From Guillardia theta CCMP2712 (lineage: Eukaryota; Protista; Cryptophyta): a DNA stretch of 64,000 nucleotides. Of the stretch, positions 14,891 to 50,593 are shown in pieces. Under the pieces are notes generated by a model. That model had not been told where the DNA came from, ran no database searches, and saw only the letters and a program-made list of their open reading frames with translations. Positions within the stretch are counted from its first letter, which is position 1. Each line of letters opens with the position of its first letter. The translations under genes and the position numbers were made by a program. The stretch spans positions 235,826-299,825 of the forward strand of contig NW_005434595.1 of the NCBI RefSeq assembly GCF_000315625.1, written 5' to 3'.

Positions 14891-15034
14891 TTCCAGCATG
14901 CCGCGCACAGGATGGCAAGCTGCTGGTCGATGTGCTTCCCTGGTTTGATTTTGTAGGTGCAAGCAGTGAGAAACAGTCTACTTGAGCTTAGCCAACTTTC
15001 TTCCTATTCTGCTCTAGCTTCCGTCATTGGAGAC

Positions 15035-18000
15035 ATGCGCTCGCTTTCCTGTCAATCTCTCGTTTTCGGACTGACGGTTGTCATCTTTCTTTCATGTAAA
15101 TGTGCATATCAAACACGTCCTGTCTCTGATTAGAATTCTGCAGCATATGCGCGTGGGGCTCCCCTATCTGGAGGTGAGAATCTGGGATCCCTCTTCTTGT
15201 TTTGGACCAGGTTTCGATCTGACCGACCATAACAGCCCAGTGTCTGCAAACTGCTCCTCCGAATGCACAGATGGTCATCACCAATAAGGGAGGTTGGTTT
15301 CTTTGCATGTTACAGTTGTAAAACTTCCTGACAAACACTTGTAGTGATACCGTTTGTCTGCGATAATATCTCGACATGTCTGGACGGCTTCGGAAACCCC
15401 CCATCTGTGGAACAGTGTGTTGCTTTGGGAAAAGTAACGGCCGACTCGATCAAGTTGGACTACAATGCAACAAGTCCCGGTTCGAACAAGGTCCAAGTGT
15501 TGATTTCAACGCCCAGCGCCACGCTCTCATATTACATCTCCATCAACGATGTATTTTTGTGGGTTCGAAAGGCGAGGGAATACCTCAACGTATGTCGACA
15601 ATATTCAGCATCGACGAATTTCACGTAAGTCAATACACCTGTTTTGCAGCGATATTTCGTTTTTTCTCTTACTTTTGGTGTGTAGGACATTTGGCTCTAG
15701 TCAAATTTTGCAAAATCTATGCCAGCGTTACCGAGACCCATCAACTGGTCTGAACACTTGCGAAAGTTTAGTCATGGATTCAAGATGCAAAACCAATGTT
15801 AACGAGGATATCTACACAATATTGTCATCAGCTCTTTGCTTGAATTCCAACAATGTGTGTTCCAACGAACAAATGTACCAGCAAACTTTCTGTTCATGCC
15901 CCTGTTGGTCAGAGATACGCCATGTCTTTAATGGAATTTTTCATCAATTGAAAGATTCGTTTCCACTTCTGGCTACAAAGTTGGACGGTCTGTCAAATCT
16001 TTGCCTGGCCAATCAACAGCAGAGCCTGCAAGTAAACGTTGTGGAAACGAGCGATGTACAATGTGCTACGAATGATGTCGTTTTCACGTTGAGTTCTACG
16101 TCTCGTATTCCAAAAGGGACCAATATCACAATCCGTGGCTTAAACGCCGACCTTCTTGTGGACTATCCTATCGTTGACAACTTACAAGTGGAGTTACCAT
16201 GGAAGTTCATTCCTGCCAAATGCCACTCTTGGTGTGACATGACAAGCGTTCCATACTTAATGTATAACAAACCTGAATGCGTTGAATGGTGCGATGAAGA
16301 CTCAATCATTAGTGTTCGTATGTTGTCAGATATTCCTCCGATTGGGCAGTTCACTCTCAAATTCAGATTCATTAATTCACCCTATTCAAGGATTGAAAGA
16401 AAGTTGAGCGTTGCAGCTTCAGGCCCAGAATTCAATTCTCCGATCACATCTGTCATTTACCAAGCTGGCATGCAAGGCGTTTTGGCTTCGAAGCACTCTC
16501 CAACATTCACAGCTGCTTCAGTACAAATTCCACCAAGTTCTTCCGATTTCTTTGATGGCAATGTATGGAGAGGAAGTTCTTGGGGAATGACCGTAAGCTT
16601 CCACTACAGCGTCACACCAAACATCGATCTACCTGCTGGATCCATGATAACAATCACGGGGTTCTTCACAGCGAAAGCTGACGTGCCTTCTCCTGTTCTA
16701 TCAGGCCAATCGATCAAATTGCTCCGCACGACATCTTGGGATCCAAATGCTGGGGTCTTGTTGCTCGAGGTCCTCCCGGAAGGAACGTTGCCTGCCGGGT
16801 TGGCAACTCAATTTTCTCTAGAGCTTGACACCTCGAATCTTCATATGATGGACCTGGTGATGTTTCAATCGATTTCTGCAACGCTGCCTCAGAATGAAAT
16901 GAATCAGTGGTGTTCACTTCCGCTAAAGAACTTCTCCCTCCCTCAGCTGACCTACACTTCCAACCCAGTCATCAGGAACCCCTCGTTGGACTCTTCGACT
17001 TGCGATCCTGGTGTCTGCTCCACTTTCGTGTTGAAATTTGCTGTGTCTGGATACTTGAACAGTTCGACCTACACGTCCATCGTCCTGGAGGGATTATTCA
17101 ACACCAGTAGATCTGATTCGTGCATCTCCGTTGGAAGCGCTTGCTCTTCAGAGACGTCGATTCCTTTGCTAGATGATGGTAAGATTTTCCTTTCAATTTG
17201 ACTCGTGCTAATTAGATTTTCAGGTCATGGTGGTAATAGTTTGTTTCAGGGGTCAGATGGACAATTATCCACTGCTTCATGGAATCCATCGACGAATGGC
17301 ATCGAGTTGTTCTTAGCCAAGCAGACAACAATCTTTCCATTCGTCGAGTATCAAGTGTCTTTCAAGCTTCAGAACGGTTTCGTCGGGAAATCTTTCAACA
17401 ATTCAAAAATCCTTTTGAGGGCTTTGAAATCGATAAACTGCAGCGGTGCTTGTCAGGATTCTGCCCCAACTCCAGTAAAAGGCCCAGCAAAGATTTGCTC
17501 TCCAGCCTTTCTTCTTCCGCAAACAAAGGTCTCCTTCCAGCATTACAATCCGTCTTGTTATGATCCAGCAGCTTGCGATGGGACAAACTCGGTAGCTACC
17601 TGTGTAAACAATCAAATCTACCTCGATCTTTACGCGAATTTCAAAGTGGTGAAGAGTTCAAGCATTACGGTAGAAGGCCTCGCTGGATTCTCGTATTTGA
17701 AACTTGTCAATGAGAGTTTCGGGACCGCTTCCTTCTCCAGTGGGGTTCTTGTTCTAAACTTGCAAGTTGATTTGGAATCTTTCTCACTCTACCAGCTTGT
17801 TTTTGATGCAAGGAGCCCCACACTTGGTGTGAAGTTTGACGCTATTCGTCTCAAGATGCAGGATCCCTTGTTTTCCTTCAATCAAAGCATCGACACGGGT
17901 TTCAGCACATCGCAATTGCTATTTGCTCCCGACCTCGTTGTGCATTCTTGGCAATCAAATCCCCTTCCTCAAGCAAGCAATACAATACATCTAAAGCTTG

Positions 18001-21000
18001 TGGCTAACTTACCTTTATCCGTCGGAACTAATGTGACCATCTCGAATCTGCCTTCTGATGCAAATCTGAATTTGGTAGAAGGAAGCTCATTCCAGATTAC
18101 GTCTTCGAAAGCAGGAACTTTGTTGCTTACTTCAACAATTCAATTTGACACCAACAACGAGATCATGATAGTATTTAATACCACAAACCCAATTACTTGC
18201 AGAAATCATGCAGATATCTTGGTTACAGCGGTGTCAGATTCGTCTTCCTGCCCGTATTCTGTTGGACCCAATCTAGCAAGCGTTGTATTCGATTCATCAC
18301 TCAGTGGGCCATGCTACAGTTGCCTCTCGACCCTCAGTTGTGACAGCTGCTACTCATGCGGGTCATCGTGCAATCCATCCTATGATGCCAGGCCGTTCAG
18401 CGTCCATTCACCTCAGTTCTGGATCAAAGAGATTTCTCAGCTGACCTCGTGGCCAGCTGCAGCCAATCAAATAGATCTGACCTTGACTCCAAATTTCCTT
18501 TTGCCGGCTGGATCGAATATAACCGTGTCTGGTCTATACGCACACTCGATGCCTCAACTTTTCTTCAAGTCCGCTAGCTTTCAGGAAAAATCCTTCTTCA
18601 TCGATTCTTCTACAAAGTCGGTCATTGTGACTTTGAATGAGGATATTCCCGTGTCTGCACAAAGTAACTTATCCATTGGATTTCAAAACCCATCCGTCGG
18701 TCAACTTCCAGTCACGGTGTGGGTGTCTGCATCAGGTGAGACCTCCAGCTGTCCAATAAGATTGCAGAGTTGCAAACTGGATCAACCGACAGACATGTAC
18801 CATAAGCCTTTCTTTGTGGAGGCCCCTTCCTTCAATGTTGCCACAATCTCGCAAAGCCAAGTCGACTCAGGCTGTAATTCGTACGCCGTCAAAAATCAGA
18901 TTACTGTTTCGTTGTCTGCCAACGTAGCACTCAATGCTACAGACAGGATCACTGTGTTTGGTCTGATTGGAAGTATCAGTGAAAGCAGCAGCTATTTTGA
19001 GATTTCCTCTAACAACCTTCTGAGTAATGAAGGGGTCTGGAGTGCTGAAAACGGATCTGTGGCAGTGCGTATCTTGACTGAGATTCTGCCGAACACTACT
19101 TTCAGCTTCTCTTTTTACCTGCTTAATCCAGCTGCACCTCAGCTAGTCTCCCAACTGGCTGTGAAGACCGACAGAATTGCACCCCAGGCCTTGCACATCG
19201 AAAACCCGCTGTCAAATCCTTTTGATTTCTCTCAATGGCCGAAACTGGTTGGATTCTCCATCACTCAGTCAACAGCAATGCCAGGTGCACTCAATTCCAT
19301 TCAGATTTCCTTTCAGCCGAACATGAAGATTCAGCCAAGCGTCGACACGCGATTGTCAATCTTGGGTCTGCAAGGAGCGTCAGCCATTGATGGGCCAATT
19401 GCGCTGTATGGCAACGACACGTCTATCTCTGTGTTTCGCTCTTCCGTTGACGGATCACCAGGAACTGGCTACTGGGACGATTGCAACAAGTCGCTCACGT
19501 TGCACCTCACTCAGCCTCTGGAGGCGAATACCATCTATGCTTTCTCTTTCAGAGTTATCAACCCCCTCTGCTTACAGATGGGGCCCTCGCTCCAAGTGCA
19601 GACTGAAGGTCTCTTTTGCTCCAAGTTCTCTTGTGCAAAAGACTTTTCTCCCAGCAAGGTTGAAGACGTCTCGTTCACCGTAGGGAGCGGAGATCTGTTT
19701 CCGCTCAAAGTTTATGCTCCAGCATTTGACGTCAGACAAGTTTCTGAATGCACCAAAGTTGCAGGTGCGCAGAACACAATCTCTGTTTCTATCCAGCCCA
19801 ACGTGAATCTGCCAAATGGAACTTCAATCCAGATCTCAAATCTGACTGGTGTAATTTTCCCTTCATCACAGATTGCTCTCGGTGGTATCAGTGCTCCTTA
19901 TTTTACAAGCGCTGTCTGGGATTCTATTACGTCCAGTGTTGTGTTGACGACGAGCGCTGAGATTTATGCTGGCAGCCTGCTGACCTTCTCGTTCAATGTG
20001 TTGAACTCAGTGACCCCGCGGAGTCCGGTGCAGCCATCGATCGGAGCCACGTCCCCTTCCATCATTGTAGGGGTTGCGTCCATGTCAGGCAGCATTCTAT
20101 CGAGCTCAGAGTCGCCCAGCATCACGTTTGCCCGAGTGTCAGAAAGCAGTGGGGTTCTTGACTCTGTCAACACGCTGATGTTCGTTGTCCGGGCCAACAT
20201 TCCCCTCAGATTTAACTACACTTTGAATGTGTCTGGTATGTCAGGAGCTGAAATTCCCGCGAACCAATCGTTGAAGGGGTTCCATGCGGGTTACTTCCAG
20301 AAGGAGTTTGGTACGGACAGCTACTCGAACAGCGCTCTCTTCCGCGTGACTTCTGAGATCCCAGCCAACACCAAGATTATGCTTGCATTCGACGTTATCA
20401 ACCAGAAGAGGCAAGCCAGCTCTCCAGTGTTGCAGGCCTCCATCAACTGCTCGACTGAGTGCAGCTCTCTCTTGAAGGGGGCCGTTATGAATTATGCCGG
20501 ACCGATTCTGCTCTCCCAGATCAATCCTTCCTTCTCCGTCGCAACTATCTCCCAAGAGACTTCTTCACCATTCCAGAACAACATTTTGTTTGTCACTTTG
20601 GCAACCAACGCCTATCTTCCATTTAACCCTGATTCCAAAAAGCGTGTGACAATCACTGGATTACTAGGAGCCAATGCCAGCTCCGGGTCGATCTCGTTGG
20701 GAGGAGCCAGTCCCTTCACCAACGCCAACTGGAACATAGATTGCGCTGCATGCCTCTCCATGGAAGTCAACGACCAGCTGCTGCCAGGCATGAACTATGT
20801 CTTCTTCTTCTACGTCCGAAATCCGTCAGCTCCTCAAGCTGCCCCGACCATTCAGATTTCCAGTACCTTCACATCTTCAGTGCAGAACATGACTTTGGGT
20901 GTTGGAGACTCAGCTCCATTGTACGTGAAGAAGTTTGATTTTCTCCAGATAAGCGCGGTGCAAAATACATCTGCACCGTGCACGCAGAACAGAATCTGTT

Positions 21001-24000
21001 TTCAACTTACTGCAAACGATCTTATTCTTCCTTCGTACCAGTTCAAGATCGCACCATTCGTGAATGCCATCATACCCACGGACTCAAACCATCAAGTTTC
21101 GTTGTCTTCCACGTCGTTTCGGGCACATTGGAGTCAAAGTGATGAAGCCTTGTACGTCACGAGTACTTGTGTCTTGCCGGCAGGAGAGCAGAAATTTTGC
21201 TTTGACTTGAACAATCCCACCATAGCGCAAGTGGCTCCAGTCTTGCGGATATCTGAAAGGAACATCAAACTGAACTACACGATTCCTACAGACGTATTTT
21301 CAATGTCGTCACCACTTTACATCTCTGATGATCTGTTCTCCGCTGAATGGTCCAGCATAGAGCAATCTTCGTTCAAGCCTTGCACAAACAACTCAATTCA
21401 CGTCAACCTGCTTCCGAACTATGATTTGTCAGTGTCATGCAAACTCAACCTTACCTTCAGCGGGCTCATGGGAACAGCGTACACTAGTTCTAAGATGACT
21501 GTAGCGATTTCACCCAAATCAAACAATTTTCCATTTTCACAGTCAGCTTACTTTGATGCCTCAATTGGGGAATTGATTGTGGATATGTCCAGTGACATCA
21601 AAGCTCATGAAGTGATAAGTTTCGATATCACATTGTTGAACAGCAATATGAGCCAGATGCAACATGAAATTCAATTGAGCTCGGCACAGCATGTTTTCAA
21701 AAGCTTTCCCCTTATTTGCAGTTCGGTCAACAATAAGTTCTGCCCCATCTACATCGAGAAACCCGAGCTTTTGGTCAACTACATAGGTCAGGATAATTCA
21801 TGGCCATCAGGCACTAACAAAATTCAATTGTCTCTCACTTTGAACTTTGGGCTTAGTGGACACCACAATGGAAAACTTGTTTTGAGTGGTTTTCCTCCTC
21901 AAAGCCTGGTAGATAGATATGTTGTAGACGACTCTTTCAGTCAGATTATCTGTAGCGCTGAGAACATAAATCAAGAAATCTACTTCAGTATGCAACCAAT
22001 CTCAGCAAGGTTCGGAATACAGAATGCTGAATTGTCTACTCATTTCATCTGTACTAAAGAATCTGGTACATATTTTTACAATGGAACTGGTTGGATGTCC
22101 TTCAATTTGCAGGAAAATGACGTTCATGTTGCTACCATTGCTGCAGAGCATACGATTGACTCGTTATTATATGGAACTTCCAGTGACATTCGCTTCTTCA
22201 AAAGCAATTCATCTCAAAAGATTTGTTCCACAACAAACTTGATTGTTGCTTTCGACGGAAATTTCTTAAATTTGACTTCAAGGGTGTATGACCTCAACAA
22301 AGATGTAAGCTCTTCTTTCAAGTCAGTACAGCAATCTGCCAATGGGGATATCATTCTTGAAGTCCAGGATGGGGTGACATTTTCAGAGGGCAGCTTCTAC
22401 TTTTACATTTTGAACCCACCGTTTGCGCGCAATCCTTCGGAGATCCGAGCATCTTTCATTTCTGACTGTGTCTCGTTACACAACCAGCCTCTGATCAGTC
22501 CTTCACCTCTTCAGGCACCCTTGATGGTTGATAGTCCAAAGCTAGATCTAGTGGTGGAGCAAACCCAGCCATTCCCTTGCTCGTCCAATACCATCTACCT
22601 GACATTCTACACGAATGTTCACTTGCAAGGGAGTAGCGGTGTGACATTCACCCTCTCCGGGCTCTCTGGCTACACAATGTACAGCCCGATTCAAATCTAC
22701 GACACGTCTTCCTTTTCACAAAGCAATCGGAATCTGTTTCAGGGAGGTTCTGCACAGAAATCTGGTCAAAATTTGATTTTTACCCTCGATGCAGCAAGGA
22801 ACTTGATTGCTGGGAGATATTATGTCTTCTTCTTTGACGTCAACAACCCGATCCAAAGCCCTTCCTCTCCTACATCAGTGACTCTCTCCTCATCTGTCTC
22901 GATCACCCCAAATGTGTCGTTTCCAATTACTTCGTCGGAGTTGTGTGCTAACAATGATCCACACGACCGATCTCCCTTGTTCATCTACCAGCCAAAGTTC
23001 CGTGTTGCTAAATTTTCTCAGAGCTCGATGGTTCCGTGCCAGAATGACACGATCACGCTTGAGATCGAGTCTAACGTGCCTCTTTGCTCGAAGCAATGTT
23101 TCAACTCTATCGTAATCACCGGGTTGTCTCTAGTGTTTCCTTCCAATGTTGTGCAGTTGAAGCCGGGGGTTGACGGAGGACAAGACCACCTTACCTTCAT
23201 CTCGAGCAATGGCGGACCAGCTTTGGGTGATTGGAACGAGCAGACAGGAGAGCTGACCTTTCTCTTCGCATGCTGTCTAGAATGTGGAAGAATATACAAT
23301 GTCACATTTGAAGCTCAAAACCCTTCTTATTCTACTCACTTTCCCCCTGCCACCATCTCTGCACGAAATGATAATGGGGTTGTCACGATTCCGATTCAAA
23401 ACATGAGCAATCTTGCGGGTGGTAACTCTTTACACCTCATCCAGCCACAACTGACAACCAAATCAATCGAGTATAGTTCAGACTTGATATGCGCAGAGAA
23501 CACAATCACCATTTCAATCGAAAGCAATCTAGAGTTGTCAGGTGGCTTGCCGTTTACTGTCTCTGGTCTCGACAACTTCAAAGCTGATAGCTTCAGTGGC
23601 TTCACTTCGGATTGCTTTACTGAGCAATCTTTCAGCAGTGGAACGCTGTCGCTGAAACTCAAGACAACTGGTCTTCAAGTGAACAACCCTTGTAAGACTA
23701 CTTTCACTGTGATCAATCCGTCAAATGAAGTGACGATTCCATTACCAACCATTCAATTCACTTCATGCAATTATCATCCCTCGGATGTGATGACTGGGAA
23801 CGAACTCAAAGTTGGTCTGAACTTGAATGCGACGGGTTCCCAAAGTAGCAGTAATCCCTGTGATACCAACACAATCACGATCATTGTCAACTTCACTGTA
23901 GCAATGGCAGATACATGTGGATTGAACATATCGATTTCTAACCTTCAGAATGCGATCTACTCATCAAATAGTTTGACAGTGGATGGCACCTCGTTTGATG

Positions 24001-39000: not shown

Positions 39001-42000
39001 ACTACAACTTCACTGTCAGCAACCTGGCTGGAGACTTCTACAGCAACGGCCAGTGGACCAACGACGACACAGGCATGCTCGCGTTCTCGATCCAAGGAAC
39101 ACTCACAGCCTCGGAGAGGTACGGTTTTACCGTCAAGCTCCAGAACCCTGTCTACGCGCAGATGGCTCCCTCGGCTCCGACGCTCAAGATCACGCCGCAG
39201 ATGGCAACGGCAGTCAGCTTCCAAGAGCCGAGTATGTCCACGTACAAGCCAGGATACTTCGAGAACATCACCTTCTCCTTGTTCGTGAACCAGAGCTCGG
39301 CGTACCCCTGCGACCCCTTGAACCGTATCACGGTGCTCCTCGAGTCCAACGTGCCCATACCTAACACGTGCAAGCTCGCCAATGACAACATGACTTACAC
39401 GCCGCTGATCACCCTGAGCGGTCTGATCAACTCCGACACCAACGAGACGTCGATCACTCTCTCGGGAGACAACACGTTCAACTCCCAGACAGCGACGTGG
39501 ACTCGGACCACGGGTGAGCTGGTTCTTCCTAAGGTCGAGCTCAACGCCAACGAGGTCTACTCGTTCGATTTCACCTTGAAGAACCCAGCGACTCCTCAGA
39601 ACGCCCCGCCAGTGTATGTCACCGCGAGCATCCTTGAGATAGCCAAGGGCGGGGCCCACCCTCGCGCAGACAATAACGGTCTAGTGCATCATCAGTTGAC
39701 GGAGATGTCATATCCTTTGTACATCATGACGCCCAACATCACGTACTTGGATATCAAGCAGAGCTCACCATATCCTTGCGATCACAATAACATCTCCTTC
39801 CACCTGGAACTCAATACGCTTCTTTTTGCAAGCTGTCCGACCTCTTTCAATTTCTCAGGACTTGACGGAACTCTTACGAGCAGCTCTTCTTCGATGACTC
39901 TGTACGACCTGAGTGGTGTTGATGTTGCTGAGTCCTTATTTGACAACGGTAAGGGTCTCTTGCAGATCAAGACAAACCAAGATACGACTGACAAGGTGTT
40001 CACGTTTGTGTTGATGTTACGCAATCAGCAAGTTGCGAAAATGGCAAGTGGCATTCAGATTTCATCAAGATTTTACAGCAGTGCTCGAGATGCATATGTT
40101 TCCTGGCCACAGCGCGTACAAGCTCCCAAGATGAATGTTGAAGATCCTATGTACATCATTCAACCGCAGTTCAATCTTTCATTTGCACAAACCAATCCGT
40201 ACCCTTGTGATTACAATATGATTTACCTCAAGTATTCTCTTAACGTGCCACTGTTTGTAGCTTGTAAACCAAAATTCTATCTAAGTGGATTGACTGGAAG
40301 TGCTACCTGGCAAGACGTTCTCGATCTCCAGACGCAGGATTCCACGACGGGAATATCAGCTGATGGCGAGACAAACTTTAACAATCAAATTTACTGGCAC
40401 TATCCGAGTGGTGCTGTGAATTTCACAATATCCCAGGACGTTGGCAGTACAGTGCAGGTTGTTTTTCAACTCAAGAATGGAGTGAATGCACAAGTAAAGG
40501 CATTGACAGACTTTGCCGTCTCGTTGTTTTACACTGAAGCAGGACTGCCTGTCAATGAAAGCTTGGCCATTCAGTATGAGCAACAGTCCTTTACGCTGCT
40601 CGATCGCCTAACAGACACGTCTCATACAATGTCGACTTCCCAATCAAACTCGATATACATGCCAACCACTAGTGAATACATTCCCATGACAATTCGGTTG
40701 TTGACGTTCAACTCCTATTCTTTGATTCAAAGCTCATCACTTCCAACCTCTTTGAATACAATTACAGTCAGTTTCAACCTCAACGTAGACCTCTTTCCCT
40801 CTTGCTTCCCCACAATGGCATTGTACAATTTAATTGGAGCATGCAATACCAACGAGACGATGTACACCAACACTGTGCAACTGAGTGGTGATTCATCCAA
40901 GTTCATGAGTTTGCAAAATGTTACCGGCTATGCCGATTGGTATCAGAAGTCTGAGACTCTAAAGATGCATGCATGGAATGACAACTCTGTTACTATTCTT
41001 GCCAACACAACCTACACGTTCTCCTTCAATGTCAGAAATCCAGCTCAGGCGCAAGGAAGCCCCTCGGTGACCCTATGTGTGAACTTTCTTGATCAGATCA
41101 ACACTGCTGCAACCTGTCAGGTCGATGTGCCAACAAGCAATGTAGAAACAAGTGTCCTTTACACACAAGGCCCCGTGTTCTTGGAGACCAGCGTCTCACA
41201 GACCACATCCTACCCCGGGCAGCTCAACTACGTCCAGATGAATCTCTCAGCAAATGTGGAGTTGAAGTATCCGGTCACGTTCACAATCTCAGGGTTTGCT
41301 GATGTCTCGGTATTTGACACCATGACGGCATGGATAGAAATGGGTTCTAACAACTACACGGCTGCGAGGTTTCCGGATCGTAACAATGGCAAGTTGGTCC
41401 TGATTGTAGAGAGCCAGGAATTCGCCATGCCTGCGTCTGAGTATTTCTTGATTCTCCTGCGTTTCCACAATCCTGGATGCGATGCTCCTAGTGCGCTGTG
41501 TGTACGAGCAAGTAACATCAAGAACTCCGTATGCAAGCTTGCGCACATTCCTCGCACCCCCTTGAAGATTATTGGAGATTCTCCACTTCATATCATGAAC
41601 GCAAACTTGACCAATGGAAAGATCAACTCTTCCTCTGTATTCCCTTGCGACCACAACACCATCACTGTGCAGCTATCTACCAACTTCCCCTTGGTATCTG
41701 GCATTCATAAAATCACCATCTCTGGATTGCGAGGGAACATACCAATGGGCCCGATGTCTGGCGATGTCCCTGTTTCTAGTTCCGGAGATGTCCTTGAAGC
41801 AACCGGGCAGTGGAATCAGGACACTGGAATGCTTATAGTTGGTGTTCAAGGATCATGGGAGAAGGACACAGAATATACTCTCTCCTTCACCTTGATAAAT
41901 CCATCATCTTCACAGGTACCATTTATTTCATGCTTGCTTGATTATGACTTTATTGTTTGCAGAGCTGTCTAGACACCTACGTTCAGATTGGACAAGTCTG

Positions 42001-45000
42001 CAACGCGAAACGGAAACTTGAGTCTCTGACGTCACCTGACTATCATGCTTCTTGCGGCCAGAGTTCGATTCAAGCTTGTCCGTTGTTTGTCCAGCAACCT
42101 GAAATCTCATTCTGGATTTCGCAGCTGACCGCCAGTCCATGTTGGAACAATACAGTCTCGATTCAGCTGGAGTCCAACGTTCCTCTTGGCTTGTGCACTT
42201 CCTTGGTCACAATCTCAGGACTTCCCGAGGGTTTATCAGCGGAGCAGAGCTACACCATTCAGACGCTGAATCAAGCCCTAGTCGTTGATGCTGCGAATGT
42301 GTTTCCAACATCGCCATGTACAAACTTCAGCATAAGCTTGAATTATGAGAATCTGCCTTACAACACATCAATGAGCGTGGTCAATGTCAACCTGTTGAAT
42401 AGTTCTAATGGCTTCAGTGTATCAGCCGCTCGTGCCAACGACCTCTATGTGGACACAGTGGTCTTCACCAAGAAGAGCATCGGGCAATCAAACCCTTGGC
42501 CAGGGGCAAACAACACCATAACAGTGACTCTAGCATTCAACGTTCCCTTGCATTCCAACTGCACCTTGATCAAAATTTCAAATTTGATCGGCGCCTGCAT
42601 TCTTGACACCAAGGTTGCGCTGCACTCCCAGGACTCGAGCATGTTCATGTCTCAAGCCCAAGAGCAAGGCTATGCGGACTGGAGCGCAAACGTTGTTGAT
42701 GGAGTGTCACATGGAGCGATCACGTTGAGACCGTCGCAGACTCTCGATGCCTTCACTCAGTACGTGTTCTCATTCGACTTCGTGAACCCATCGCAGGCTC
42801 AGAACTCACCGAGCATTGGAATTCAGACCTACATCAATGGCTACTCGAACGACCTCATCCCGATGGATCCTGATTCAACTTCGACACCAGCCTCTGCCTG
42901 CACCACCTTGAGCAGCTGCAAGTTTGTTCAGGGTGATGCATTGCCTCTGCAAATCTACGCACCCATGTTCCTCGTCAAGAATATCACTCAAGACACCGCT
43001 TATCCCTTGGTTGAAAATCAGTTGTCTGTGATTCTCATGACAAATATTCCGTTGTCTGCTCAATCAAGAGTCACAATCACTGATTTGAAAACAAATGAGA
43101 CTTCTTCGGGAGAGATTAGTTTAACAGGAACCGACGCCGGCAAGTTTGGGAGTGTAGGTTACTGGAACAATGAGTCTGATCGCATGACAGTAACAGTGAC
43201 GGAGAGGATCGAAGCAGGACAGGTAGTCATGTTCACCTTCACGCTGAAGAATCCCAACTGCCCACAACCATCTCCAGGAGTTTGTATCAGGGCAAGCATG
43301 ATCCGCAACCCTTGTGATGTGAATGCTGTCACAATTTACCGCCAGCCAATGGACAAGGATGTTGTGGCTTGCCTCGACTTTGCTGCAAGGTACAGTCAGA
43401 CAGCTGACAATGCAACTTGCTCAGCATTACCACGACTTCCGATGCAGCAAGGATATGCTGCTCCACTCAAGATTTTGCCATCTGAGCTTCATGTCTTGTA
43501 CCTGAACGGCTCTGTGATTGATAACTCCTTTGAGATAACGATGTCCTTCTACACAAATGTGCCAATTCTAAATGGATCTGCTTTAGTGGTGACTGGATTG
43601 CCCTACTTGAGCTCATCGCAAGCGATGGTAGAAATGCCATTCACAGGAAGTTGGATGGTTGACAAGGATTCCCTTGTCTTTACTTTGAGTGGCAACACTA
43701 CTCCCGGAGTACCTTATTCAGCCAAGATAACGATCAGTCATGCAATTTGCTCATCGATGTACCTCAACATCACCCTTAGCATCACAAAGATGTGCTTTGC
43801 TCCTGTCACGAACTTAGTGGCTTTGCAGGTCCATACATGGTTGCTCCAATCAGTCTCTGTCAACCAATCGTCTGCAATGGCACTTGGTGAGAACATGATT
43901 TATTTCGAAGTCACTTTGAACGAGCCACTTATTCTGGGAATGAACCTTTTGATCAAAGGACTGCCAACGGAGTATTTGACTGGTGGCTATTCTCTACACA
44001 ATGTTGGCGGTAATATCAACAGTGAGTTCATGCTCGAGTCAAACGTCATCAACATCAGTGCAACATCATCAACTGGCAACCAAGTCTATATGTTCTCATT
44101 CAAGGCCAAGAATCCGCTTTGTTGTCACTCATTCGCAAATATGACAGTTGAAATCGTCAGATGCCAAAAAATCCTTGACATGCAATACGCACATGTTCCA
44201 GAGAATGTGCTATACCGACCGTTCCAGACTTACTGTCCCTCTGTGCTCTATGGACCAATTCTATCTAACACTTCTAGATTGCCGTGCTCCGCTGAGAACT
44301 TCACAGTGAATGTATCTTTTACAGTACCCTTGTTTTCAGGTACAACCTTTCACTTGATTGGTCTTGAGAAGTTAAATTACACCGAACTCAGACTCAGCGG
44401 TCTCTCGTATGCCCCGTGCTCATCCTCGATGTATTGTGTGGAGCTGACAGAAGATATTGCACAAGAACAGGAAGTGATTGTTGAGCTGACGGCAATCACT
44501 GGAACTGAGTCGTCCTGGTGGACAAGCTCTGTGCAGCTGTTGGTGAATGGTACATGTCCTTTGCTCGATCATACAATCATCAAACCGGGACAAGTGTTCC
44601 CAGTTGTCGAGCCTCTCAAGCTAACAGTACAGAACATAGCTCAGCAGACATACTTGCCGGGAGCTTTCAACGAACTCACTGTCACTATCGCCACCAACTT
44701 TGCGGTCCCGCGAATGTACTGCCCCTCGCTGATGGTCTACATCAGCGGTTTGCAAGGAGCTTGCGTGCGAAATCCACCAACCTACACGAGCGAGGAGATC
44801 GCAAGCGCCAATTGGCAAGGAAATGGAGTCATTGAGATGGAGATTACAAAGCTCTTTGTGCTCAATACCTCTGATTTCGTTTTCTCGTTTGTGGTTCAAA
44901 ATCCCGGGTTTGCACAAAAAGCGGCAGCTGTAAGCATCGAGGTGTCTGGAGGGTTGAATTTGCCGAGACAAAAGATGAACTTCGGCACAAGCGACCTGAT

Positions 45001-48000
45001 GCTGTATCCTCTTGTGGTGACTGGTCCGACCTTTGTGACCTCTGAGATTGGTCAGTCCACAAGTTTCCCTTCATACAACAATCAGATCACTGTAACATTC
45101 AGCGCCAATATCAAGTTGACGGAGGGCTCCATCATCACCCTGTCTTCTCTAGGAAAGAATGTGACTGCTTCATGGATGCCTCTTGACACAGTGAATCTGA
45201 CTGGCGACTCCTCATACTTCTCTGATAGCCCCGGTGGAAGCGATTCTAAAGGCATTCTGAACAGCCTCACGGAGACGCTCAAGCTGTTCGTTCTCAAACC
45301 CATCGATGCGTTCCAAACCATCGTGATCTCCTTCAACGTCACCAATCCGGGATGTTTCCGTCCTGCTGCTGATGTGTGTATTGCGGCCAGTAACATCTTG
45401 ACAGAGAATTGTCCGCACAACGCAACGATCGAACGATCGCAGATCAAGGTTCGAAATGATCCATTCCTTACCCTCCGACCCGAGATCCTGAGCAGCACGA
45501 TTGAACATTCGAACCCCTGGCCCTTACAGGCGAACACCATTACTTTGAATTTCAAACTGAATGTCGATGCAATGCAAACAGTGACAAACATTTCTATTCT
45601 CAGCCTTGAGCCTTTGGTGGGCATTCAAAGCATAAGCGATGTTCAGTCCAATCCTTCCTTGGGCACCCTAAATGCTCTCGTCACAGGAAACGCTTTCATC
45701 TTCACCACCACAGAGAGCATCATGCACGACACAGACTATCAGATATCATTCACCATCAACAACAGCTATTGTCAGGGCATGCTTCACAACTTGTCCCTTG
45801 CGATATCTGCTTTCCCTGGTTGTTCGCCATCCTTGCCAATTCAGCAAATCAAATTGAACAGCTGCAACTCAATGACATACCCATTCCAAGTTTTGGGAAG
45901 CACATGTTCTGGAATCAGCACGATGAACTTTACTCAAGCGCAGATTTCACAATCAAACTCAAAGCCAGGATGCAGCAACGAGATCACGCTGACCTTTCAG
46001 TCCATGCTCTCCTTGGCCGCGGACAAGACAGCTATCAAAGTGACCTTTACGCAAGACCTGCCTCTAAACAGTGACTTCACAATCTCTGGACCAAACGCAT
46101 CTAACTTTGCTAACACCGCAACGTATTCATCACGAACGATTGAGTTAAAGGTCAAAGAGACGTTACAAGCTTGCTCTCCCGTCACAATCTCGTTTGCGTT
46201 TAACAACCCGATGACCTACACAATGCCTGGCAAGGTTTCCATCGAGGCTATCGGCACTGTGAGCAACGTCAATGAAGTGATTCTGCCTCCATATGCGATC
46301 TCACCATCTTCGGTTCTGACGATTGACCGGTGGAGGGTAGGAAAGAGTCTTATGTCTCAGAGTAGCCCATACCCAGGTGACCTCAACAACCTTACAGTCA
46401 CCTTGTCGTTCGAAGGCAGTCTTAAGCAGAACAGTGTAGTGTACTTGTACGCCATCGATGGTGCAGACCATCAGGAAGGTACCGTCGAGCTGAACTGGAT
46501 CAGCGCTGCGCCAGCTTTCGAAGCCACGTGGTACAACTGTCAGAAGGTCCTCAAGTTGACAGCCAACAGAGACGTGGTCTGCAGCGAAGTGCTGCAGTTC
46601 TCCTTCCAAATTCGCAACCCCTTGATGCCTCAGCTTCAGGCGATGGTGGACATGAACATCTCCGACCCTCAGGGAGTGATGCTTCTCAACAAGTCAGCTG
46701 TCTCTTGCGATTACTCTGCCCCGATGAGCATCAAGGCTGCTGTACAGGAAGACTACTGCCCGATGACCGTCTGGCCGGCCGTGTTCCTTACCAAGAAGGT
46801 TGCACAGTCCTCCTCAATCCCCTGCGACGAGAACCTCATCACCTTCTCGTTTGCTACCAACGTCCCCATCTTCCCAACAGTGAGTTATACTGCTGAAGCA
46901 TACACCGCCGCCAAACTTGTGATTGAAGGATTTCCATTCAACAATCAATCGACGGTGCAGCTGGAAAACATACAAGCTTACAAATTCTGTGATGGCCAAG
47001 TATTGGAGACTATGCCTACGTTCTTTGATTCTACTTCTGTACAAGTAGTTCAGGGCTCTGTGACCTTAATTTTGAATCCGGCGACTAATCCCAACATTAC
47101 GAGCTACAACTTGGGAATGGAAGATGTGGTGATCTCGTTCAGCTTTAAGGTCAAGAATCCTTTACCTTTCTCGCATGATTCGACGTCTGGAGTCTTTGCT
47201 TCAATCATTATGGTCGGAAACAATCCATTCACCATGATTGAAAGGACTATGCTGTACGTTGAAACTATGAATGGCCTAATTCCTTATGTCTCATCTCCTC
47301 AATTCACAGTTCGAAGTGTTTCCCAGAACAGCTCGGTGCCTTGCGATGACAACACAATTACCATTTCTCTGCAGATGGATCAGAACATTCTGAAGTGCTC
47401 AACAGATGCCGAGTTGATCATCAGCTCGCTCGAGGTTGATCTTCCAGCTCAGCCAGCCATAGTCAGCTCAAGTTCGTACATCGCCAACAGCGGTCTTTGG
47501 AACAGCATGACGAGATCGCTGACAGTGAGCATCACCGAGTCATGGACTGCAAGTCAAACTCTTGTGTTCTCAGTCTCAACGGTCAACCCTCATTATCCAC
47601 AGAGCAATGTGAGTCAACCCATGGTGACCATCAAAGATTATACCGCCTTCCCTACCGCTCTACAGTCGCCCGACGGCATTTACCCCACCTCAGTCGCCAT
47701 TCCTGGCATCGTCCTGTCCAACATCGTGCAGTCAACCTCCATCCCTGGAGCACAGAACATGCTGACCGTGACTCTGATGTCAAATCTGACCATCTCTAAC
47801 AAGTGCGGAACCATCCTGACGATCTCTGGGTTGTCAGGTATCTGTCCCTCCTCAGTGATTGATCTTTCTGGCAACGGGTCCTCAATCTTCGGTGGCAAAG
47901 CACACTGGATGAATGCTTCAAATGCTGTGACCATGACAATCAGTGAGAGCATGATGGCGAATGTGATCTACCAGATCTCCTTCACAGTCCTCAACCCAAG

Positions 48001-50593
48001 CACTCCACAGCCATCTCCACGCATCTTGCTTCAGTACTTCTTGTATCAACCTATCACACAAAACATGACCAAGGTGATGACATCAGCTGGAGCCGCTCTA
48101 GAGATCACTGGAAACCTCAAATTCAATGTGGCGACTGTCACTCAAACCGAGGCGGCAGCAGGCAGCACGAACAAGATTACCTTCACTTTCCAGACGAACG
48201 TGCCCCTCTACTCAATGGCCAGCTTGACCATCTCCGGGCTGAAATCAGACCATGCCTTGGAGTCTGTCCAGTATCAGGCCCCTTTGAACGGAGAGTTCAA
48301 CTCCCAGGCTGGGCTGCTGGTGCTCAACATCAGCTCTTCGCTGTCCGAGGGTGTGAACTACACTGTTAGCTTCAACATGGTCAACCCGAGACAAGCGAGA
48401 CTGCCGCAGAGAGTGTTCATTGAGTCTGGCGGAGTCATCCTGCCAAAGGTCGAGATGACACCTGCGACAGGGGACCTTGCTCCTTTCGTGGTGCTGCCTC
48501 CCTACTTCAACACCTCCTCGGCTTCTCAGAACGTTCACAACTCGTCGACTAAGCCTGGGCAGCTCAACTCGCTGTCCCTGTCGTTCTCCGCGTCGGTCAA
48601 GTTGATTGCTAACGAGAGCGTCTGGTTCTCTGTCACAAACCTGCATGGCGTGAAGCTTGCATCGCAAGTCGCCGATTCAGTGTCAGGCCCCAGCATGGAC
48701 AAGTTCTCTAAGTGGATCTGGAACTCGACGAACAGTACACTTTCCTTCCAGCTGGGTCAAGACTTGAATGCCTTCGAGGTGTTGGACTTCAGCCTGCAGC
48801 TCACCAACGGAGTCTACGGGCAGGACGGGCAGCAGCTTTACCTCCAAGTGTTCTCATATGGGTCTGGAGTGTTCATCCCTTACACCCCCTTGCAGTCTGA
48901 TCCGAACCTGCTGCTCATCGAGTCTTCCGTCTCCTTCCTCGAGAAGAGTATCGGGCAGAGCTCATGGCTCCCTGGAGCCACCAACACCTTGTCGGTGACT
49001 CTCAAGCCAGAGTTCCCGCTCAAGCAAGGAGACTCAGTCACTGTACACGGGCTGCTGGGATTTCAAAGAAATGACGGCATCCTGACCCTTCTAAATGCTG
49101 GCCCTGGCTTTGAGCCGAATGCAACCTGGTCAAGATCTGCTGGCAGAGTGATTCTGACGGTGGCTGAGAATTCAGAGATCTCAAACACCACTGAAGTGAG
49201 CTTTGACCTTCAAAACCCCCTCTACCCGCATGCCTGCCTTGAGAACATTCAGATCTCTGCGACATCCAACGTACCTTACCTGAAGGCTCCAATGAGCACA
49301 GGGCCGGACAAGAGCTGCCCGCTCTACATTGTTGCTGCTGGTTTCTCGAACCTGTCCATCTCTTCATCTTCCATCGTTGCGGACACCACTAACGACGTCT
49401 CGATCATGTTTCAAACCAACATGAACATCTTTGCTTACTCAAGCACGACCATCTCCGTCCAGGGGCTCATCGGGACAGCAACTCCTTCCCAGGATTTCAT
49501 CCCAGTAACTGTCGATCCAGTGTCGCTGGGTAAAGACTTTGCGCCTCAAGCAGAGCTGATTGAGGTGGGCTTTGCTCCTTCATGCACGCTATCCAACCAG
49601 CAAGTGGTGCTGACCAACTTGAACGGCAACGGAACTCTCAAGGGCGCCAACATGTACTTCACTTGCCAGAAGCAGACTCCCATTCAGATTTCCGCCTACG
49701 ATTGGGCTTCCAAGTGCGCTAACTTGTCTTCTCTGCCGTCTTGCACTCTGGGTCAGGTTGAGTACGTCACTGTTGTGGATGGAGGCCTTGGATACCTTTC
49801 AGGGCCCTTCGAGGTGGCATCTGGTTCCCAGGTGTCAGGCTTGTCAGGAAACTGCACAGTCAACACGGCAGGAGCCATCACAGGCATCGTCATCATCACC
49901 AAGGGTCAAGGCTTCTCTCCTGGTGACAAGATCGTCTGTCCGGGCAACAACATCACTCGCCCAGCTGTATTCCAGTACACGACCAGCAACGACACGGCCT
50001 CCGTGTCGGCCGCCAAGTGGAACCAAGACTTTGGCCGTCTGGAGCTCAACTATCTCGGAGAGGCGTTGGAGGAAAGCATGCAGTACAAGTTCTCTGTAAG
50101 CTTGTTGAACGGGATCAGGCCGCAAGCTGCTCAGACGGCATCCATCTCCATCCAGTCTCCTGTGCCTTTCGGTACTCAAACGTTCCAGCAAAAGGCCATG
50201 GAGATCCTTCAGTTTGCGTCGGTTTACACAAGAGCGTCGACAGCAGCACCCAACACAGCAGAGAGCACGCAGGTGTTGTTCAAGGGGATGCAGTGCCAGC
50301 AGTCGTCAGTCTACCTCATCTCTGCCGACGTTCAGTGCAACACTCCCATCTCTACCTTATCCCTCATGATGAATGGTGAGACCACCACCGTCAACAACCC
50401 CCTCCAGAGTTGCTCCACCTACTGCACCCAGTATGCTAGGGTGGTCGACCGCAAGCAGTACTCGTACGGGTCTCTGAACCTGGACACAGCTGCCTTCTAT
50501 GGCATTCTCAACACCACGCAAGCATCGGAAAGTATGGTTGACGTGTGTGGAAACAAAGAGCGATTGAAGATTATCTTCACATTAGAGTGTTAG
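15035..50593 (+). CDS. Giant (11,747 aa) secreted Ser/Thr/Asn/Cys-rich tandem beta-domain repeat protein, 7 exons
   Basis: Exons 15035-15095, 15144-15173, 15236-15292, 15345-15624, 15686-17178, 17224-41915 and 41963-50593. All six introns are GT-AG, 45-62 nt, and keep the frame. Total 35,244 nt = 11,748 codons. Signal peptide MRSLSCQSLVFGLTVVIFLSSYARG. Recurrent module: xQSxxxPCxxNxIxxxxxxNVPL...IxIxGLxG...WxxxxGxLxL...YxFxFxxxNPxxxQxxP...PLY. Confidence 0.92.
35337..39780 (+). repeat. Near-perfect in-frame tandem repeat, 1755-bp (585 aa, four modules) unit, ~2.5 copies
   Basis: Units start at 35337, 37092 and 38847; the third ends at 39780. Only a few substitutions were seen (LTSIE/LTIIE, QPTIK/QPSIK, silent att/atc, SQIAT/SQTAT). 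Confidence 0.97.

What the first reader, a model, noticed from the sequence alone, without database searches (positions are those of the whole stretch)
15035..50593. One gene encodes an ~11,750-aa secreted protein made of ~80 copies of an unrecognised beta-rich module
Seen: the separate ORFs splice cleanly into a single 35,244-nt CDS. It has a signal peptide, no catalytic motifs, no transmembrane helix or GPI-type tail, very many N-x-S/T sequons, and a ~145-aa module (QSxxxPCxxN..NVPL..IxGL..W..GxL..YxFxF..NP..Q..PLY). The period comes from 4 modules per 585-aa unit; the copy number is estimated from length, not counted. Inference: alternating hydrophobic strands suggest Ig-like beta-sandwiches with a disulfide. 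That would make a >1 MDa glycosylated filament hundreds of nm long, a candidate building block or molecular ruler for a cryptophyte surface structure (periplast fibrils, scales, flagellar hairs, mucilage). I cannot assign it to a named family.
Basis: partly seen in the sequence, partly recalled or inferred. Interest (0 to 1): 0.92.

Follow-up and report, generated by a model that had tools for sequence, protein, structure and literature searches.

The report
Giant secreted beta-module protein of a cryptophyte
One expressed, seven-exon gene of a cryptophyte alga (very probably Guillardia theta) encodes an 11,747-residue secreted protein made of 78 tandem beta-sandwich modules of a family that no domain database recognises; it is most likely a long extracellular rod of the cell covering, and it belongs to a large, so far undescribed family rather than being a one-off.

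Summary
RNA contigs from two studies splice out five of the six proposed introns, including the one that removes the in-frame stop at 17199-17201. The sixth (41916-41962) has indirect support only. The CDS is 35,244 nt and encodes 11,747 aa (1.27 MDa, pI 4.8). It has a signal-peptide-like N-terminus and no hydrophobic tail. An HMM built on the protein itself counts 78 modules, with a period of about 145 aa and about 20% mutual identity. No module reaches a Pfam threshold. An AlphaFold model of one module is confident (pLDDT 88.8) and shows a nine-strand beta-sandwich with only generic matches to solved structures (best Z 7.5).

- The gene is not unique. The genome has at least 15 loci with the module, including two other giant genes. 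Public data hold 2,115 related cluster representatives.
- The 585-aa "unit" is only a recent 2.5-copy amplification, not a general super-repeat.
- Sequons exceed the composition expectation only 1.2-fold.
- Only the Cys-rich N- and C-terminal domains and the end modules are conserved by position in relatives. The interiors turn over, which argues against a strict ruler.

Function is inferred, not shown: an extracellular rod or filament of the cell surface. Two earlier scan notes (s1-431891, s1-431892) cover this same stretch.

The parts
14865..15034 (+). 5' UTR (minimum extent), with short upstream ORFs
   Evidence: The RNA contig of X6 runs 35 nt beyond 14900, and that of X5 runs 15 nt beyond (record coordinates). 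The sequence was read.
15035..15095 (+). Exon 1: start codon and signal-peptide-like N-terminus (MRSLSCQSLVFGLTVVIFLS...)
   Evidence: Assigned by sequence pattern only; no signal-peptide predictor was available.
15096..15143 (+). Intron 1 (48 nt, GT..AG)
   Evidence: Joint seen in the RNA contigs of X5 and X6.
15144..15173 (+). Exon 2
15174..15235 (+). Intron 2 (62 nt, GT..AG)
   Evidence: joint 15171>15234, cut +2.
15236..15292 (+). Exon 3
15293..15344 (+). Intron 3 (52 nt, GT..AG)
15345..15624 (+). Exon 4 (part of the N-terminal Cys-rich domain)
15625..15685 (+). Intron 4 (61 nt, GT..AG)
15686..17178 (+). Exon 5: the rest of the N-terminal Cys-rich domain (CxCxCW motif, to about 16049), then modules 1-3
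   Evidence: The domain is conserved in P0023, P0180, P0035 and P0036. It has a weak paralogue at C165:50897-51190 (E 2.2e-5).
17179..17223 (+). Intron 5 (45 nt, GT..AG), which contains the in-frame TGA at 17199-17201
   Evidence: Joint seen in the RNA contigs of X5 and X6; sequence.
17224..41915 (+). Exon 6 (24.7 kb): modules 3-59
   Evidence: The X6 contig is long enough to reach about 35,366 with no further gap.
35337..39780 (+). Recent in-frame tandem amplification: 2.53 copies of 1755 bp (585 aa, 4 modules), differing at a handful of positions
   Evidence: Modules 45-54 are 98-100% identical at offset 4.
41916..41962 (+). Intron 6 (47 nt, GTACCA..TTGCAG). Inferred, not seen as a joint.
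   Evidence: Word share is 0.53 in RNA-like runs against 1.00 in DNA runs. Module 59 keeps its period across the junction.
41963..50593 (+). Exon 7: modules 59-78, the C-terminal block and the stop codon
   Evidence: A public 1,119-aa protein (P0053) is 100% identical to aa 10,629-11,747.
16050..50140 (+). Array of 78 beta-sandwich modules (aa 265-11,597): core of about 97 aa plus linker, period 113-207 aa with a mean of about 145
49742..49987 (+). Duplicated 'GGxGY ... G.C.VD..G.V..I....G.GY' motif domain, inside the conserved C-terminal block
   Evidence: Invariant Gly and Cys columns in A2. This is the best-modelled part of the C-terminal model (pLDDT 70-91).
50210..50590 (+). C-terminal cap domain (about 127 aa): jelly-roll-like beta-sandwich with conserved Cys (QCN, C..(x3)C, D.CG..LK)
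   Evidence: It sits at the extreme C-terminus of relatives from at least 10 divergent clusters and is single-copy in this genome.
50643..50648 (+). AATAAA, 50 nt after the stop codon; a candidate polyadenylation signal
   Evidence: Sequence only.

Best explanation
Shown. Window 15035-50593 (+) is a single transcribed seven-exon gene. Its product is an 11,747-aa, 1.27-MDa acidic protein rich in Ser, Thr and Asn. The parts, in order, are:
1. a cleavable-looking signal peptide;
2. a Cys-rich N-terminal domain of about 240 aa;
3. 78 tandem modules of about 145 aa, each predicted to be a nine-strand beta-sandwich;
4. a conserved 322-aa C-terminal block that ends in a Cys-containing jelly-roll-like cap.
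There is no membrane anchor.

Inferred. The protein enters the ER. Many modules are pinned by a disulfide between two conserved Cys, and the protein is N-glycosylated. It is exported as a semi-rigid rod a few hundred nm long (78 modules at about 4-5 nm each; the per-module length is a general figure for beta-sandwich domains, not measured here). The conserved, unique terminal domains would attach or join the rod, to the cell surface or to other subunits. The interior modules would act as spacers, and their number changes by in-frame tandem amplification. The most likely role is as a structural or adhesive fibril of the cryptophyte cell covering (extracellular periplast layer or fibrillar coat). 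It is one member of an expanded family of such proteins.
For: - Gene model and expression: spliced RNA contigs from two studies, 10 and 20 kb long, at mean word depth 262 and 325. The RNA-like runs also hold both flanks of intron 6.
- Protein features.
- 78 modules. The fold is confident and all-beta (pLDDT 88.8, pTM 0.83).
- The nearest shapes are surface-protein beta-sandwiches: CBM3-like sensors, YweA/BslA, pilins, the alpha-2-macroglobulin receptor-binding domain and DUF11/CARDB. All are weak matches.
- Cys1 and Cys2 co-occur (28/17/6/21, p 0.0014).
- The termini are conserved and unique. The C-terminal block lies at the very end of relatives in at least 10 clusters, with 16 invariant columns including several Cys, and is single-copy in the genome. 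The N-terminal CxCxCW domain is conserved.
- The interior is variable. Only modules 1-3, 8-11 and 76-78 map by position in relatives, and there is a recent 1755-bp amplification here.
- Some family members carry other extracellular domains (CUB, TIG, Fn3_assoc/CHB_HEX_C_1, DUF4215).
- Named relatives are cryptophytes: Teleaulax amphioxeia and Baffinella frigidus.
Against: - No localisation, peptide or glycan data exist for this protein.
- The signal peptide and the absence of an anchor rest on sequence inspection, not on a predictor.
- The residues after the predicted cleavage site carry net positive charge and no acidic residues, so a bipartite plastid or periplastid presequence is not formally excluded.
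- The inter-module geometry was not modelled, so 'rod' is an analogy with other tandem beta-sandwich arrays.
- Sequons are only 1.2-fold enriched.
- 17 of 72 non-redundant modules have the first Cys without the second at the aligned position.
- Intron 6 and the copy number of the 1755-bp repeat were not confirmed by reads that span them.
Confidence: 0.6

Rival explanations
1. This protein specifically is the secreted high-molecular-mass polypeptide that self-assembles into the surface periplast component (SPC) of cryptophytes. The terminal domains would drive the lattice or fibril assembly.
For: [quoted passage not shown] I found no gene for it in the held literature. The present protein is secreted by sequence, very large, well represented in RNA contigs, and has conserved orthologue-specific termini.
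Against: The 1997 paper could not be read, so the mass and composition of that polypeptide are unknown to me. The genome has at least 15 loci with this module, including two other giant genes, so any of them, or an unrelated protein, could be the SPC subunit. In the held paper the Guillardia surface is described only as 'knobbly'.
Confidence: 0.17
2. It is a shed or loosely attached extracellular protein with a non-architectural role: mucilage or adhesive fibril, a decoy or barrier against grazers, bacteria or viruses, or a cell-cell recognition agglutinin. Such a role would select for fast-changing repeat numbers.
For: There is no anchor. The protein is acidic and rich in Ser, Thr and Asn. 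Array interiors turn over quickly and amplifications are recent, both here and in the paralogue on C18. The paralogue family is large. These are features shared, from general knowledge, with microbial adhesins and mucins.
Against: The strictly conserved, single-copy terminal domains suggest a defined assembly partner rather than a generic coat. The modules are folded and about 20% identical to each other, so most of the array is old rather than hypervariable.
Confidence: 0.15
3. It resides inside an endomembrane-derived compartment, for example as an ejectisome scaffold, an ER or Golgi matrix protein, or a periplastid-compartment protein imported through a bipartite presequence.
For: The signal peptide only shows entry into the ER. 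The 30 residues after the predicted cleavage site have net charge +2 and no acidic residue, which loosely resembles a transit-peptide-like extension.
Against: A folded, disulfide-bearing 1.27-MDa chain is an implausible substrate for plastid-envelope translocons (inference from general knowledge). The post-signal region is already part of a conserved Cys-rich domain. From memory, ejectisome ribbons are built of small polypeptides; this was not checked here.
Confidence: 0.06
4. The giant reading frame is an assembly or annotation artefact: a collapsed or expanded repeat, fused neighbouring genes, or a decaying pseudogene.
For: The 1755-bp copies are almost identical, so their number (2.53) cannot be checked with short contigs. 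Intron 6 is inferred. The public protein set holds only a 1,119-aa piece.
Against: There are 35 kb without a stop after six canonical short introns are removed. The 20-kb spliced RNA contig ends exactly where the repeat begins, as a k-mer assembler would break. The gene has no N run. The modules are diverged yet all keep the fold motif. Relatives are colinear over 4.8 kaa and reach the same C-terminus.
Confidence: 0.02

Closest known systems
Giant bacterial repeat adhesins built of tandem Ig-like extender domains (e.g. SiiE, LapA/Bap-type, the 1.5-MDa ice-binding adhesin MpIBP). Cited from general knowledge.
   Same: MDa-size secreted proteins. Dozens to more than 100 tandem beta-sandwich modules of about 100 aa act as a spacer. 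Distinct functional domains sit at the two ends. Repeat number changes by in-frame amplification.
   Different: This protein is eukaryotic and enters through an ER signal peptide. It has conserved Cys pairs and N-glycosylation sequons. Pfam reports no RTX, HemolysinCabind or Big_x match. The module is longer (about 145 aa, nine strands). No homology is detectable.
DUF11 / CARDB / DUF2808 prokaryotic surface beta-sandwich domains
   Same: They are the nearest annotated shapes in the ESM Atlas (TM 0.62 for a DUF2808 cluster, 0.53-0.56 for DUF11/CARDB/PKD clusters). One module touches DUF2808 at E 0.015 and four touch Big_5 at E >= 0.016.
   Different: All sequence matches are far below the Pfam thresholds. 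TM 0.5-0.6 is in the range of a shared general sandwich. Unannotated eukaryotic clusters are much closer (TM 0.73-0.77).
CBM3-like sensor modules, YweA/BslA, YcnI, the alpha-2-macroglobulin receptor-binding domain and Gram-positive pilin domains (solved structures)
   Same: These are the best structural alignments of the module: Z 7.1-7.5 over 112-117 residues at rmsd 2.8-4.2 (4b97, 5mkd, 3zqx, 7me6, 1ayo, 6ezr, 7ohz). All are extracellular beta-sandwiches.
   Different: Z below 8 is the tool's own 'common arrangement' range. Sequence identity is 5-12%. Foldseek finds nothing at E <= 1e-3. The consensus shows no conserved Lys/Asn isopeptide pattern and no sugar-binding platform.
Titin, twitchin and obscurin (giant intracellular Ig/Fn3 arrays). 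Cited from general knowledge.
   Same: Giant size, and a chain of about 100 small beta-sandwich domains.
   Different: Those are cytosolic, built of Pfam-recognised I-set and fn3 domains, with conserved super-repeats that act as rulers. Here there is a signal peptide, no I-set or fn3 match, no super-repeat beyond one recent amplification, and no positional conservation of interior modules.
Gel-forming mucins, von Willebrand factor and SCO-spondin. Cited from general knowledge.
   Same: Very large secreted glycoproteins whose Cys-rich N- and C-terminal domains join subunits end to end. This is an analogy for what the conserved Cys-rich termini here might do.
   Different: Pfam finds no VWD, C8, TIL or CTCK domain. 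The centre here is made of folded modules, not a disordered Pro/Thr/Ser region. Self-association of the C-terminal cap could not be assessed (no verdict).
Paralogues in the same genome (C165:50.8-88.3 kb; C10:36.6-85.4 kb; C18 and others)
   Same: They carry the same module: 72 modules in about 12,650 aa of consecutive open frames on C165, 39 on C10, and at least 15 loci overall. C165 also has a weak homologue of the N-terminal domain. C18 shows its own tandem amplification with 1347-bp spacing.
   Different: A search of the genome with its last 150 residues (the cap) found only this gene. C10 carries long stretches with no module.

Membership tests
Any Pfam-A domain family (Ig-like: Big_5, TIG, PKD, I-set, fn3, DUF11, CARDB, DUF2808) | HMM match at or above the family's gathering score | tested here: not met
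   Four long pieces, the termini and 70 single modules were scanned. The best hits were Big_5 in 4 of 70 modules at E >= 0.016, and TIG, K319L-like_PKD and DUF2808 in one module each at E 0.006-0.015. All are far below the cut-offs.
RTX/Bap-type giant adhesins | RTX nonapeptide (HemolysinCabind) repeats with a type-I secretion signal at the C-terminus, and Big-type extender domains | tested here: not met
   No HemolysinCabind or Big_x match in exon 7 or in the last 419 aa. The C-terminus is a conserved Cys-containing beta domain.
Gel-forming mucin / vWF type | VWD-C8-TIL assemblies at the N-terminus, a CTCK domain at the C-terminus, and a disordered PTS-rich centre | tested here: not met
   No such Pfam domains were found. 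The centre consists of 78 folded modules.
Titin-like ruler proteins | Conserved super-repeat pattern and position-specific conservation of domains between species | tested here: not met
   Mean module identity is 0.20-0.21 at every offset except 4 and 8, and that excess comes only from modules 45-54. In relatives only the end modules map by position.
Solved beta-sandwich families (CBM3, BslA/YweA, pilin CnaB-like, macroglobulin RBD) | Structural match clearly above background (Z >= 8, or Foldseek E <= 1e-3), or a sequence-profile match | tested here: not met
   Best Z is 7.5. The best Foldseek E is 1.2e-3 at TM 0.40. The module profile against PDB sequences gives a best E of 0.0036 to an unrelated capsid fusion.
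New cryptophyte giant-module family (this work: profile A1) | Tandem modules of about 145 aa with the motif QSS..PC..N.I.V....N..L....C....SGL...W...L....F.F...NP...Q....PL | tested here: met
   78 modules in this protein. 2,115 cluster representatives at E <= 1e-3 and 486 at E <= 1e-30, with up to 30 modules each. 603 first-look candidates in this genome.
Orthologue group of this gene within that family | Conserved 322-aa C-terminal block (GGxGY duplication plus a Cys-containing cap) at the extreme C-terminus, and an N-terminal CxCxCW domain | tested here: met
   The block aligns end to end in 37 fetched proteins from at least 10 clusters. In the 19-row alignment A2, 16 columns are invariant. 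Its last 150 residues match nowhere else in this genome. The N-terminal domain appears in P0023, P0180, P0035 and P0036.
Secreted high-molecular-mass surface-periplast polypeptide of cryptophytes (Perasso et al. 1997; title only) | Secreted, of very high mass, and self-assembling into the surface periplast component | not testable with these tools
   Secretion (signal peptide by sequence) and mass (1.27 MDa) are compatible. Localisation and self-assembly need experiments. The paper itself could not be read.

The most novel reading that the evidence does not exclude
This orthologue group, defined by single-copy conserved Cys-rich N- and C-terminal domains flanking a variable array of a previously unrecognised beta-sandwich module, encodes the long-unidentified secreted high-molecular-mass polypeptide that self-assembles into the outer (surface) periplast layer or fibrillar coat of cryptophytes. 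The wider module family would then be the protein toolkit of cryptophyte cell coverings.
Probability: 0.17. Interest if true: 0.75.

Novelty: new variant of a known kind. Interest (0 to 1): 0.6.

Why it matters
The inner periplast layer of cryptophytes now has candidate proteins, the epiplastins (PMC6212826). I found no gene assigned to the extracellular layer in the held literature, although a 1997 title says that layer self-assembles from one secreted high-molecular-mass polypeptide.

This report provides four usable things:
- a verified gene model, where the public protein set holds only a 1,119-aa fragment;
- a module profile that recovers more than 2,000 related cluster representatives;
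- a confident fold for the module;
- two unique terminal domains that can serve as antigens.

Together these make the question directly testable by surface proteomics and immunogold labelling.

More generally, it adds a new eukaryotic beta-sandwich domain family that Pfam does not cover. It also shows that one small algal genome carries at least three genes with about 12,000 aa or more of consecutive open reading frame. These genes grow by in-frame tandem amplification, and standard annotation truncates at least this one.

Tried and rejected
- Tandem Repeats Finder (period <= 500) found nothing in the gene. The modules are too diverged and the recent repeat too long.
- A brute-force search for ORF-preserving splice paths in the 5' region gave 1,048 solutions, so sequence alone could not fix the model. 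RNA contigs did.
- The raw-read RNA run X24 gave a single read on the stretch at 6% sampling. It was of no use for junctions or strand.
- Word-indexed protein searches were weak. The 1,412-aa query gave 19 hits with almost no names. The 4-module profile A3 gave only 3 hits. The taxonomic range beyond cryptophytes therefore remains unknown.
- The ESM Atlas feature search returned unannotated eukaryotic clusters. BslB appeared only at a sub-threshold score of 0.82.
- Profile against PDB sequences: nothing meaningful.
- The C-terminal block model is only moderately confident (pLDDT 62.8). Its cap gives generic jelly-roll matches (Z <= 7.2: lambda gpJ, nucleoplasmin, FlhE, CBM35). I do not interpret these.
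- Complex prediction on two copies of the C-terminal cap gave no verdict (score 0.00, the partner's own fold uncertain, alignment not used). This is not evidence either way.
- Considered and dropped: isopeptide-bonded pilin-like domains (no conserved Lys in the consensus), and Thr-Gln ester or Cys-Gln thioester cross-links (not testable without coordinates; the co-varying second Cys makes a disulfide the simpler reading).
- The Perasso 1997 paper is not held. One broad literature query was uninformative.

Full report
**1. What is in the sequence**

The + strand between 15.0 and 50.6 kb carries three very long open frames: 15504-17198, 17202-41969 and 41948-50590. The first two are separated by a single in-frame TGA. 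The last two are separated by a frame shift. Both breaks lie inside short sequences with canonical GT..AG ends and a pyrimidine-rich 3' part. The gene contains no N run; the only one in the window is at 54818-54917.

**2. The gene model tested with RNA**

Sequence alone could not fix the 5' exons, because 1,048 ORF-preserving paths exist.

I laid public runs on 14900-17400. Two RNA-derived contigs from different studies (X5, 10,098 nt; X6, 20,234 nt) each show five GT..AG joints. The introns are 15096-15143, 15174-15235, 15293-15344, 15625-15685 and 17179-17223. The last one removes the TGA at 17199-17201. DNA contigs (X2) are unspliced.

The share of sampled words held by these RNA-like runs in the run search was 0.83. 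That is what removing these five introns predicts.

The record coordinates place the 5' end of the X6 contig at about 14,865. Its 3' end, if there is no further gap, falls at about 35,366. That is 30 nt into the perfect tandem repeat that starts at 35,337, exactly where a 31-mer assembler must break. This is indirect evidence that 17,224-35,366 has no further intron.

Three observations support it:
- The same RNA-like runs hold 0.53 of the words of 41826-42052, against 1.00 in DNA runs. About 0.61 is expected if the intron is removed and both flanks are present, and about 0.3 if a transcript ended there.
- Splicing restores the frame.
- Module 59 keeps a normal 149-aa period across the junction.

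The refutation criterion 'transcripts ending at 17201' is excluded. 'Ending at 41972' is unlikely but not formally excluded.

**3. The organism**

The assembly has 87,145,349 bases in 669 contigs. A published table gives the same assembly size (87.1 Mb) and scaffold count (669) for Guillardia theta (PMC6260743). I take the organism to be G. theta on that basis. No marker gene was compared.

**4. The protein**

- Mass 1.27 MDa, pI 4.8. Composition: S 13%, T 8.7%, N 7.3%, C 2.1% (247 Cys).
- The N-terminus reads MRSLSC, then a 15-residue hydrophobic core, then SYA|RG. This is a signal peptide by pattern.
- Apart from the N-terminus, the highest 19-residue hydrophobicity windows (up to 1.74) lie in strand-like repeat segments and none reads as a membrane helix by eye; no transmembrane predictor was run. 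There is no hydrophobic C-terminal tail.
- There are 210 N-x-S/T sequons, against 175 +/- 11 in shuffles. The enrichment is modest.

**5. The modules**

An HMM iterated on the protein itself converges on 78 modules between residues 265 and 11,597. Spacing is 113-207 aa, about 145 on average.

Modules are about 20% identical to one another at every offset. The excess at offsets 4 and 8 comes only from modules 45-54, which belong to a 4,444-bp stretch (35337-39780) of 2.53 copies of a 1755-bp unit. Those copies differ at a handful of positions. So there is a very recent in-frame amplification of four modules, but no general super-repeat.

**6. Family assignment**

No Pfam-A model reaches threshold on long pieces, on the termini, or on any of 70 individual modules. 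The best results are sub-threshold touches of Big_5, TIG, PKD-like and DUF2808. The module profile finds nothing meaningful among PDB sequences.

**7. Fold**

The 70 modules served as an alignment for AlphaFold2. It models module 46 with pLDDT 88.8 and pTM 0.83 as an all-beta domain of nine strands.

- Foldseek against the PDB gives no hit at E <= 1e-3.
- The exhaustive structural search gives a best Z of 7.5: CBM3-like RsgI sensor modules, YweA/BslA, YcnI, the alpha-2-macroglobulin receptor-binding domain and many Gram-positive pilin domains. By the tool's own calibration this is the range of a common arrangement.
- In the ESM Atlas the closest shapes are unannotated eukaryotic clusters (TM 0.73-0.77), followed by DUF2808 (0.62) and DUF11/CARDB/PKD (about 0.53-0.56).

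The two most conserved Cys columns co-occur across non-redundant modules (28 both, 21 neither, 17 and 6 single; Fisher p 0.0014). A disulfide would predict this. I could not inspect coordinates.

**8. It is a family, not a singleton**

The module profile, searched against 1.84 billion cluster representatives, finds 2,115 proteins at E <= 1e-3 and 486 at E <= 1e-30. They carry up to 30 modules in chains of up to 5,746 aa. Nearly all come from unnamed environmental assemblies. The named ones are cryptophytes: Teleaulax amphioxeia (EukProt, 4,350 aa) and Baffinella frigidus. A few relatives also carry CUB, TIG, Fn3_assoc/CHB_HEX_C_1 or DUF4215 domains, all typical of extracellular proteins.

In the window's own genome the profile has 603 first-look candidates on at least 15 contigs. 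I cut out and counted two loci:
- C165:50.8-88.3 kb has consecutive open frames of 169, 464, 7,474 and 4,549 aa, with 72 modules.
- C10:36.6-85.4 kb has frames of 1,934, 11,325 and 3,015 aa, with 39 modules and much other sequence.

The C18 locus shows its own tandem amplification with 1347-bp spacing.

The public protein collection holds, for the present gene, only a 1,119-aa piece identical to residues 10,629-11,747.

**9. What is conserved between relatives**

Several environmental proteins align colinearly with the C-terminal part of this protein over up to 4,849 columns at about 26% identity, and end at the same residue.

The last 322 aa form a conserved block found at the extreme C-terminus of 37 fetched proteins from at least 10 clusters. 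In a 19-row alignment of these (A2), 16 columns are invariant, several of them Cys. The block contains:
- a duplicated GGxGY motif domain;
- a final module;
- a cap of about 127 aa with the motifs QCN, C...C and D.CG..LK.

A search of this genome with its last 150 residues (the cap) matched only this gene, so these proteins are probably orthologues.

The Cys-rich N-terminal domain (CxCxCW) is likewise conserved in other relatives. It has one weak paralogue, just upstream of the C165 array.

Module-by-module comparison shows positional correspondence only near the ends: modules 1-3 and 8-11 in an N-terminal relative, and 76-78 in C-terminal relatives. The interiors of relatives are repeated runs of a few module types.

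The picture is therefore conserved ends with an interior that expands and turns over independently in each lineage.

The C-terminal block models only moderately well (pLDDT 62.8). Its cap resembles jelly-roll sandwiches at Z <= 7.2, with no specific match.

**10. How it most likely works**

Shown: one expressed gene; signal-peptide-like start; 78 folded beta modules; unique conserved Cys-rich ends; no anchor; a recent in-frame amplification.

Inferred:
- The protein is translocated into the ER, forms disulfides and is N-glycosylated.
- It is exported as an extended rod a few hundred nm long. This assumes 78 modules at about 4-5 nm each, a general figure for such domains, and that the chain termini lie at opposite poles of each module.
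- The terminal domains attach or join the rod, and the interior acts as a spacer.

By analogy with bacterial giant adhesins and with other secreted repeat proteins, I consider a structural or adhesive fibril of the cell covering the best explanation (0.6).

The specific identification with the 'secreted high-molecular-mass polypeptide' of the surface periplast component rests only on a paper title and on compatibility. I give it about 0.17.

A strict 'molecular ruler' is unlikely, given the interior turnover. Rivals placing the protein in an internal compartment, or treating it as an artefact, are weak (see the rival explanations).

**11. Novelty and score**

Giant secreted proteins made of tandem beta-sandwich modules are a known kind. 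What is new here:
- the module family, which Pfam does not cover and which has no specific structural relative;
- its expansion in cryptophytes;
- the verified 11,747-aa model, where public data hold a fragment;
- the end-conserved, interior-variable architecture.

I found no paper on it. It is not the largest algal protein known (from memory, the PKZILLA synthases are larger), and its open reading frames are matched or exceeded by those at two other loci in its own genome. I rate it 'new variant of a known kind', with interest 0.6.

**12. Limits**

- Nothing here concerns toxins or viruses.
- Two earlier first-stage notes lie on this same stretch. Note s1-431892 (recent 1755-bp amplification) agrees. 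Note s1-431891 (titin-like super-repeat grammar) is not borne out.

Noticed in passing
window 14898-14960: The 5' UTR covered by the RNA contigs contains short upstream ORFs before the main start at 15035. One example is the ATG at 14898, which opens a 16-codon ORF.
   Followed up: no
G000:C165:50837-88323 (L020-L024): A sister giant gene: consecutive + strand open frames of 169, 464, 7,474 and 4,549 aa with 72 modules of the same family. A weak homologue of this gene's N-terminal domain lies at 50897-51190. The fetched stretch contains 300 N.
   Followed up: partly
G000:C10:36598-85402 (L013-L018): Consecutive open frames of 1,934, 11,325 and 3,015 aa (about 48.8 kb). Only 39 modules were detected, so most of this even longer candidate gene is made of something else. 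It was not examined.
   Followed up: partly
G000:C18:182644-194268 (- strand): A paralogue with a 4,592-aa open frame. Module hits recur with identical scores at 1347-bp spacing, at least six times. This is a second, independent recent in-frame amplification, of three modules.
   Followed up: no
window 49742-49987: A duplicated 'V.V.dGG.GY.sG...' / 'G.C.VD..G.V..I....G.GY' motif domain, invariant across relatives. It has only a weak structural touch to the phage T4 tail-sheath fragment 3fo8 (Z 5.6, 22% identity over 74 residues). Another first-stage note (s1-430706) reports 'GSGY beta repeats' in a different giant secreted protein of this genome; the two may be related.
   Followed up: partly
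runs X12, X16-X20: Freshwater and lake metagenome runs hold part of this gene. X12 holds the same 0.53 word share around intron 6 as the spliced RNA runs. That suggests cDNA-like or cross-sample material rather than a freshwater population of what is taken here to be G. theta, which I recall is a marine species. Not examined.
   Followed up: no
public protein P0053 (UniRef), = window 47237-50590: For this gene, the only protein in the searched collections that is identical to it is a 1,119-aa C-terminal fragment. The deposited annotation appears to miss about 90% of the coding sequence.
   Followed up: partly
window 54818-54917: A run of 100 N (assembly gap) downstream of the gene, inside the neighbouring region.
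   Followed up: no
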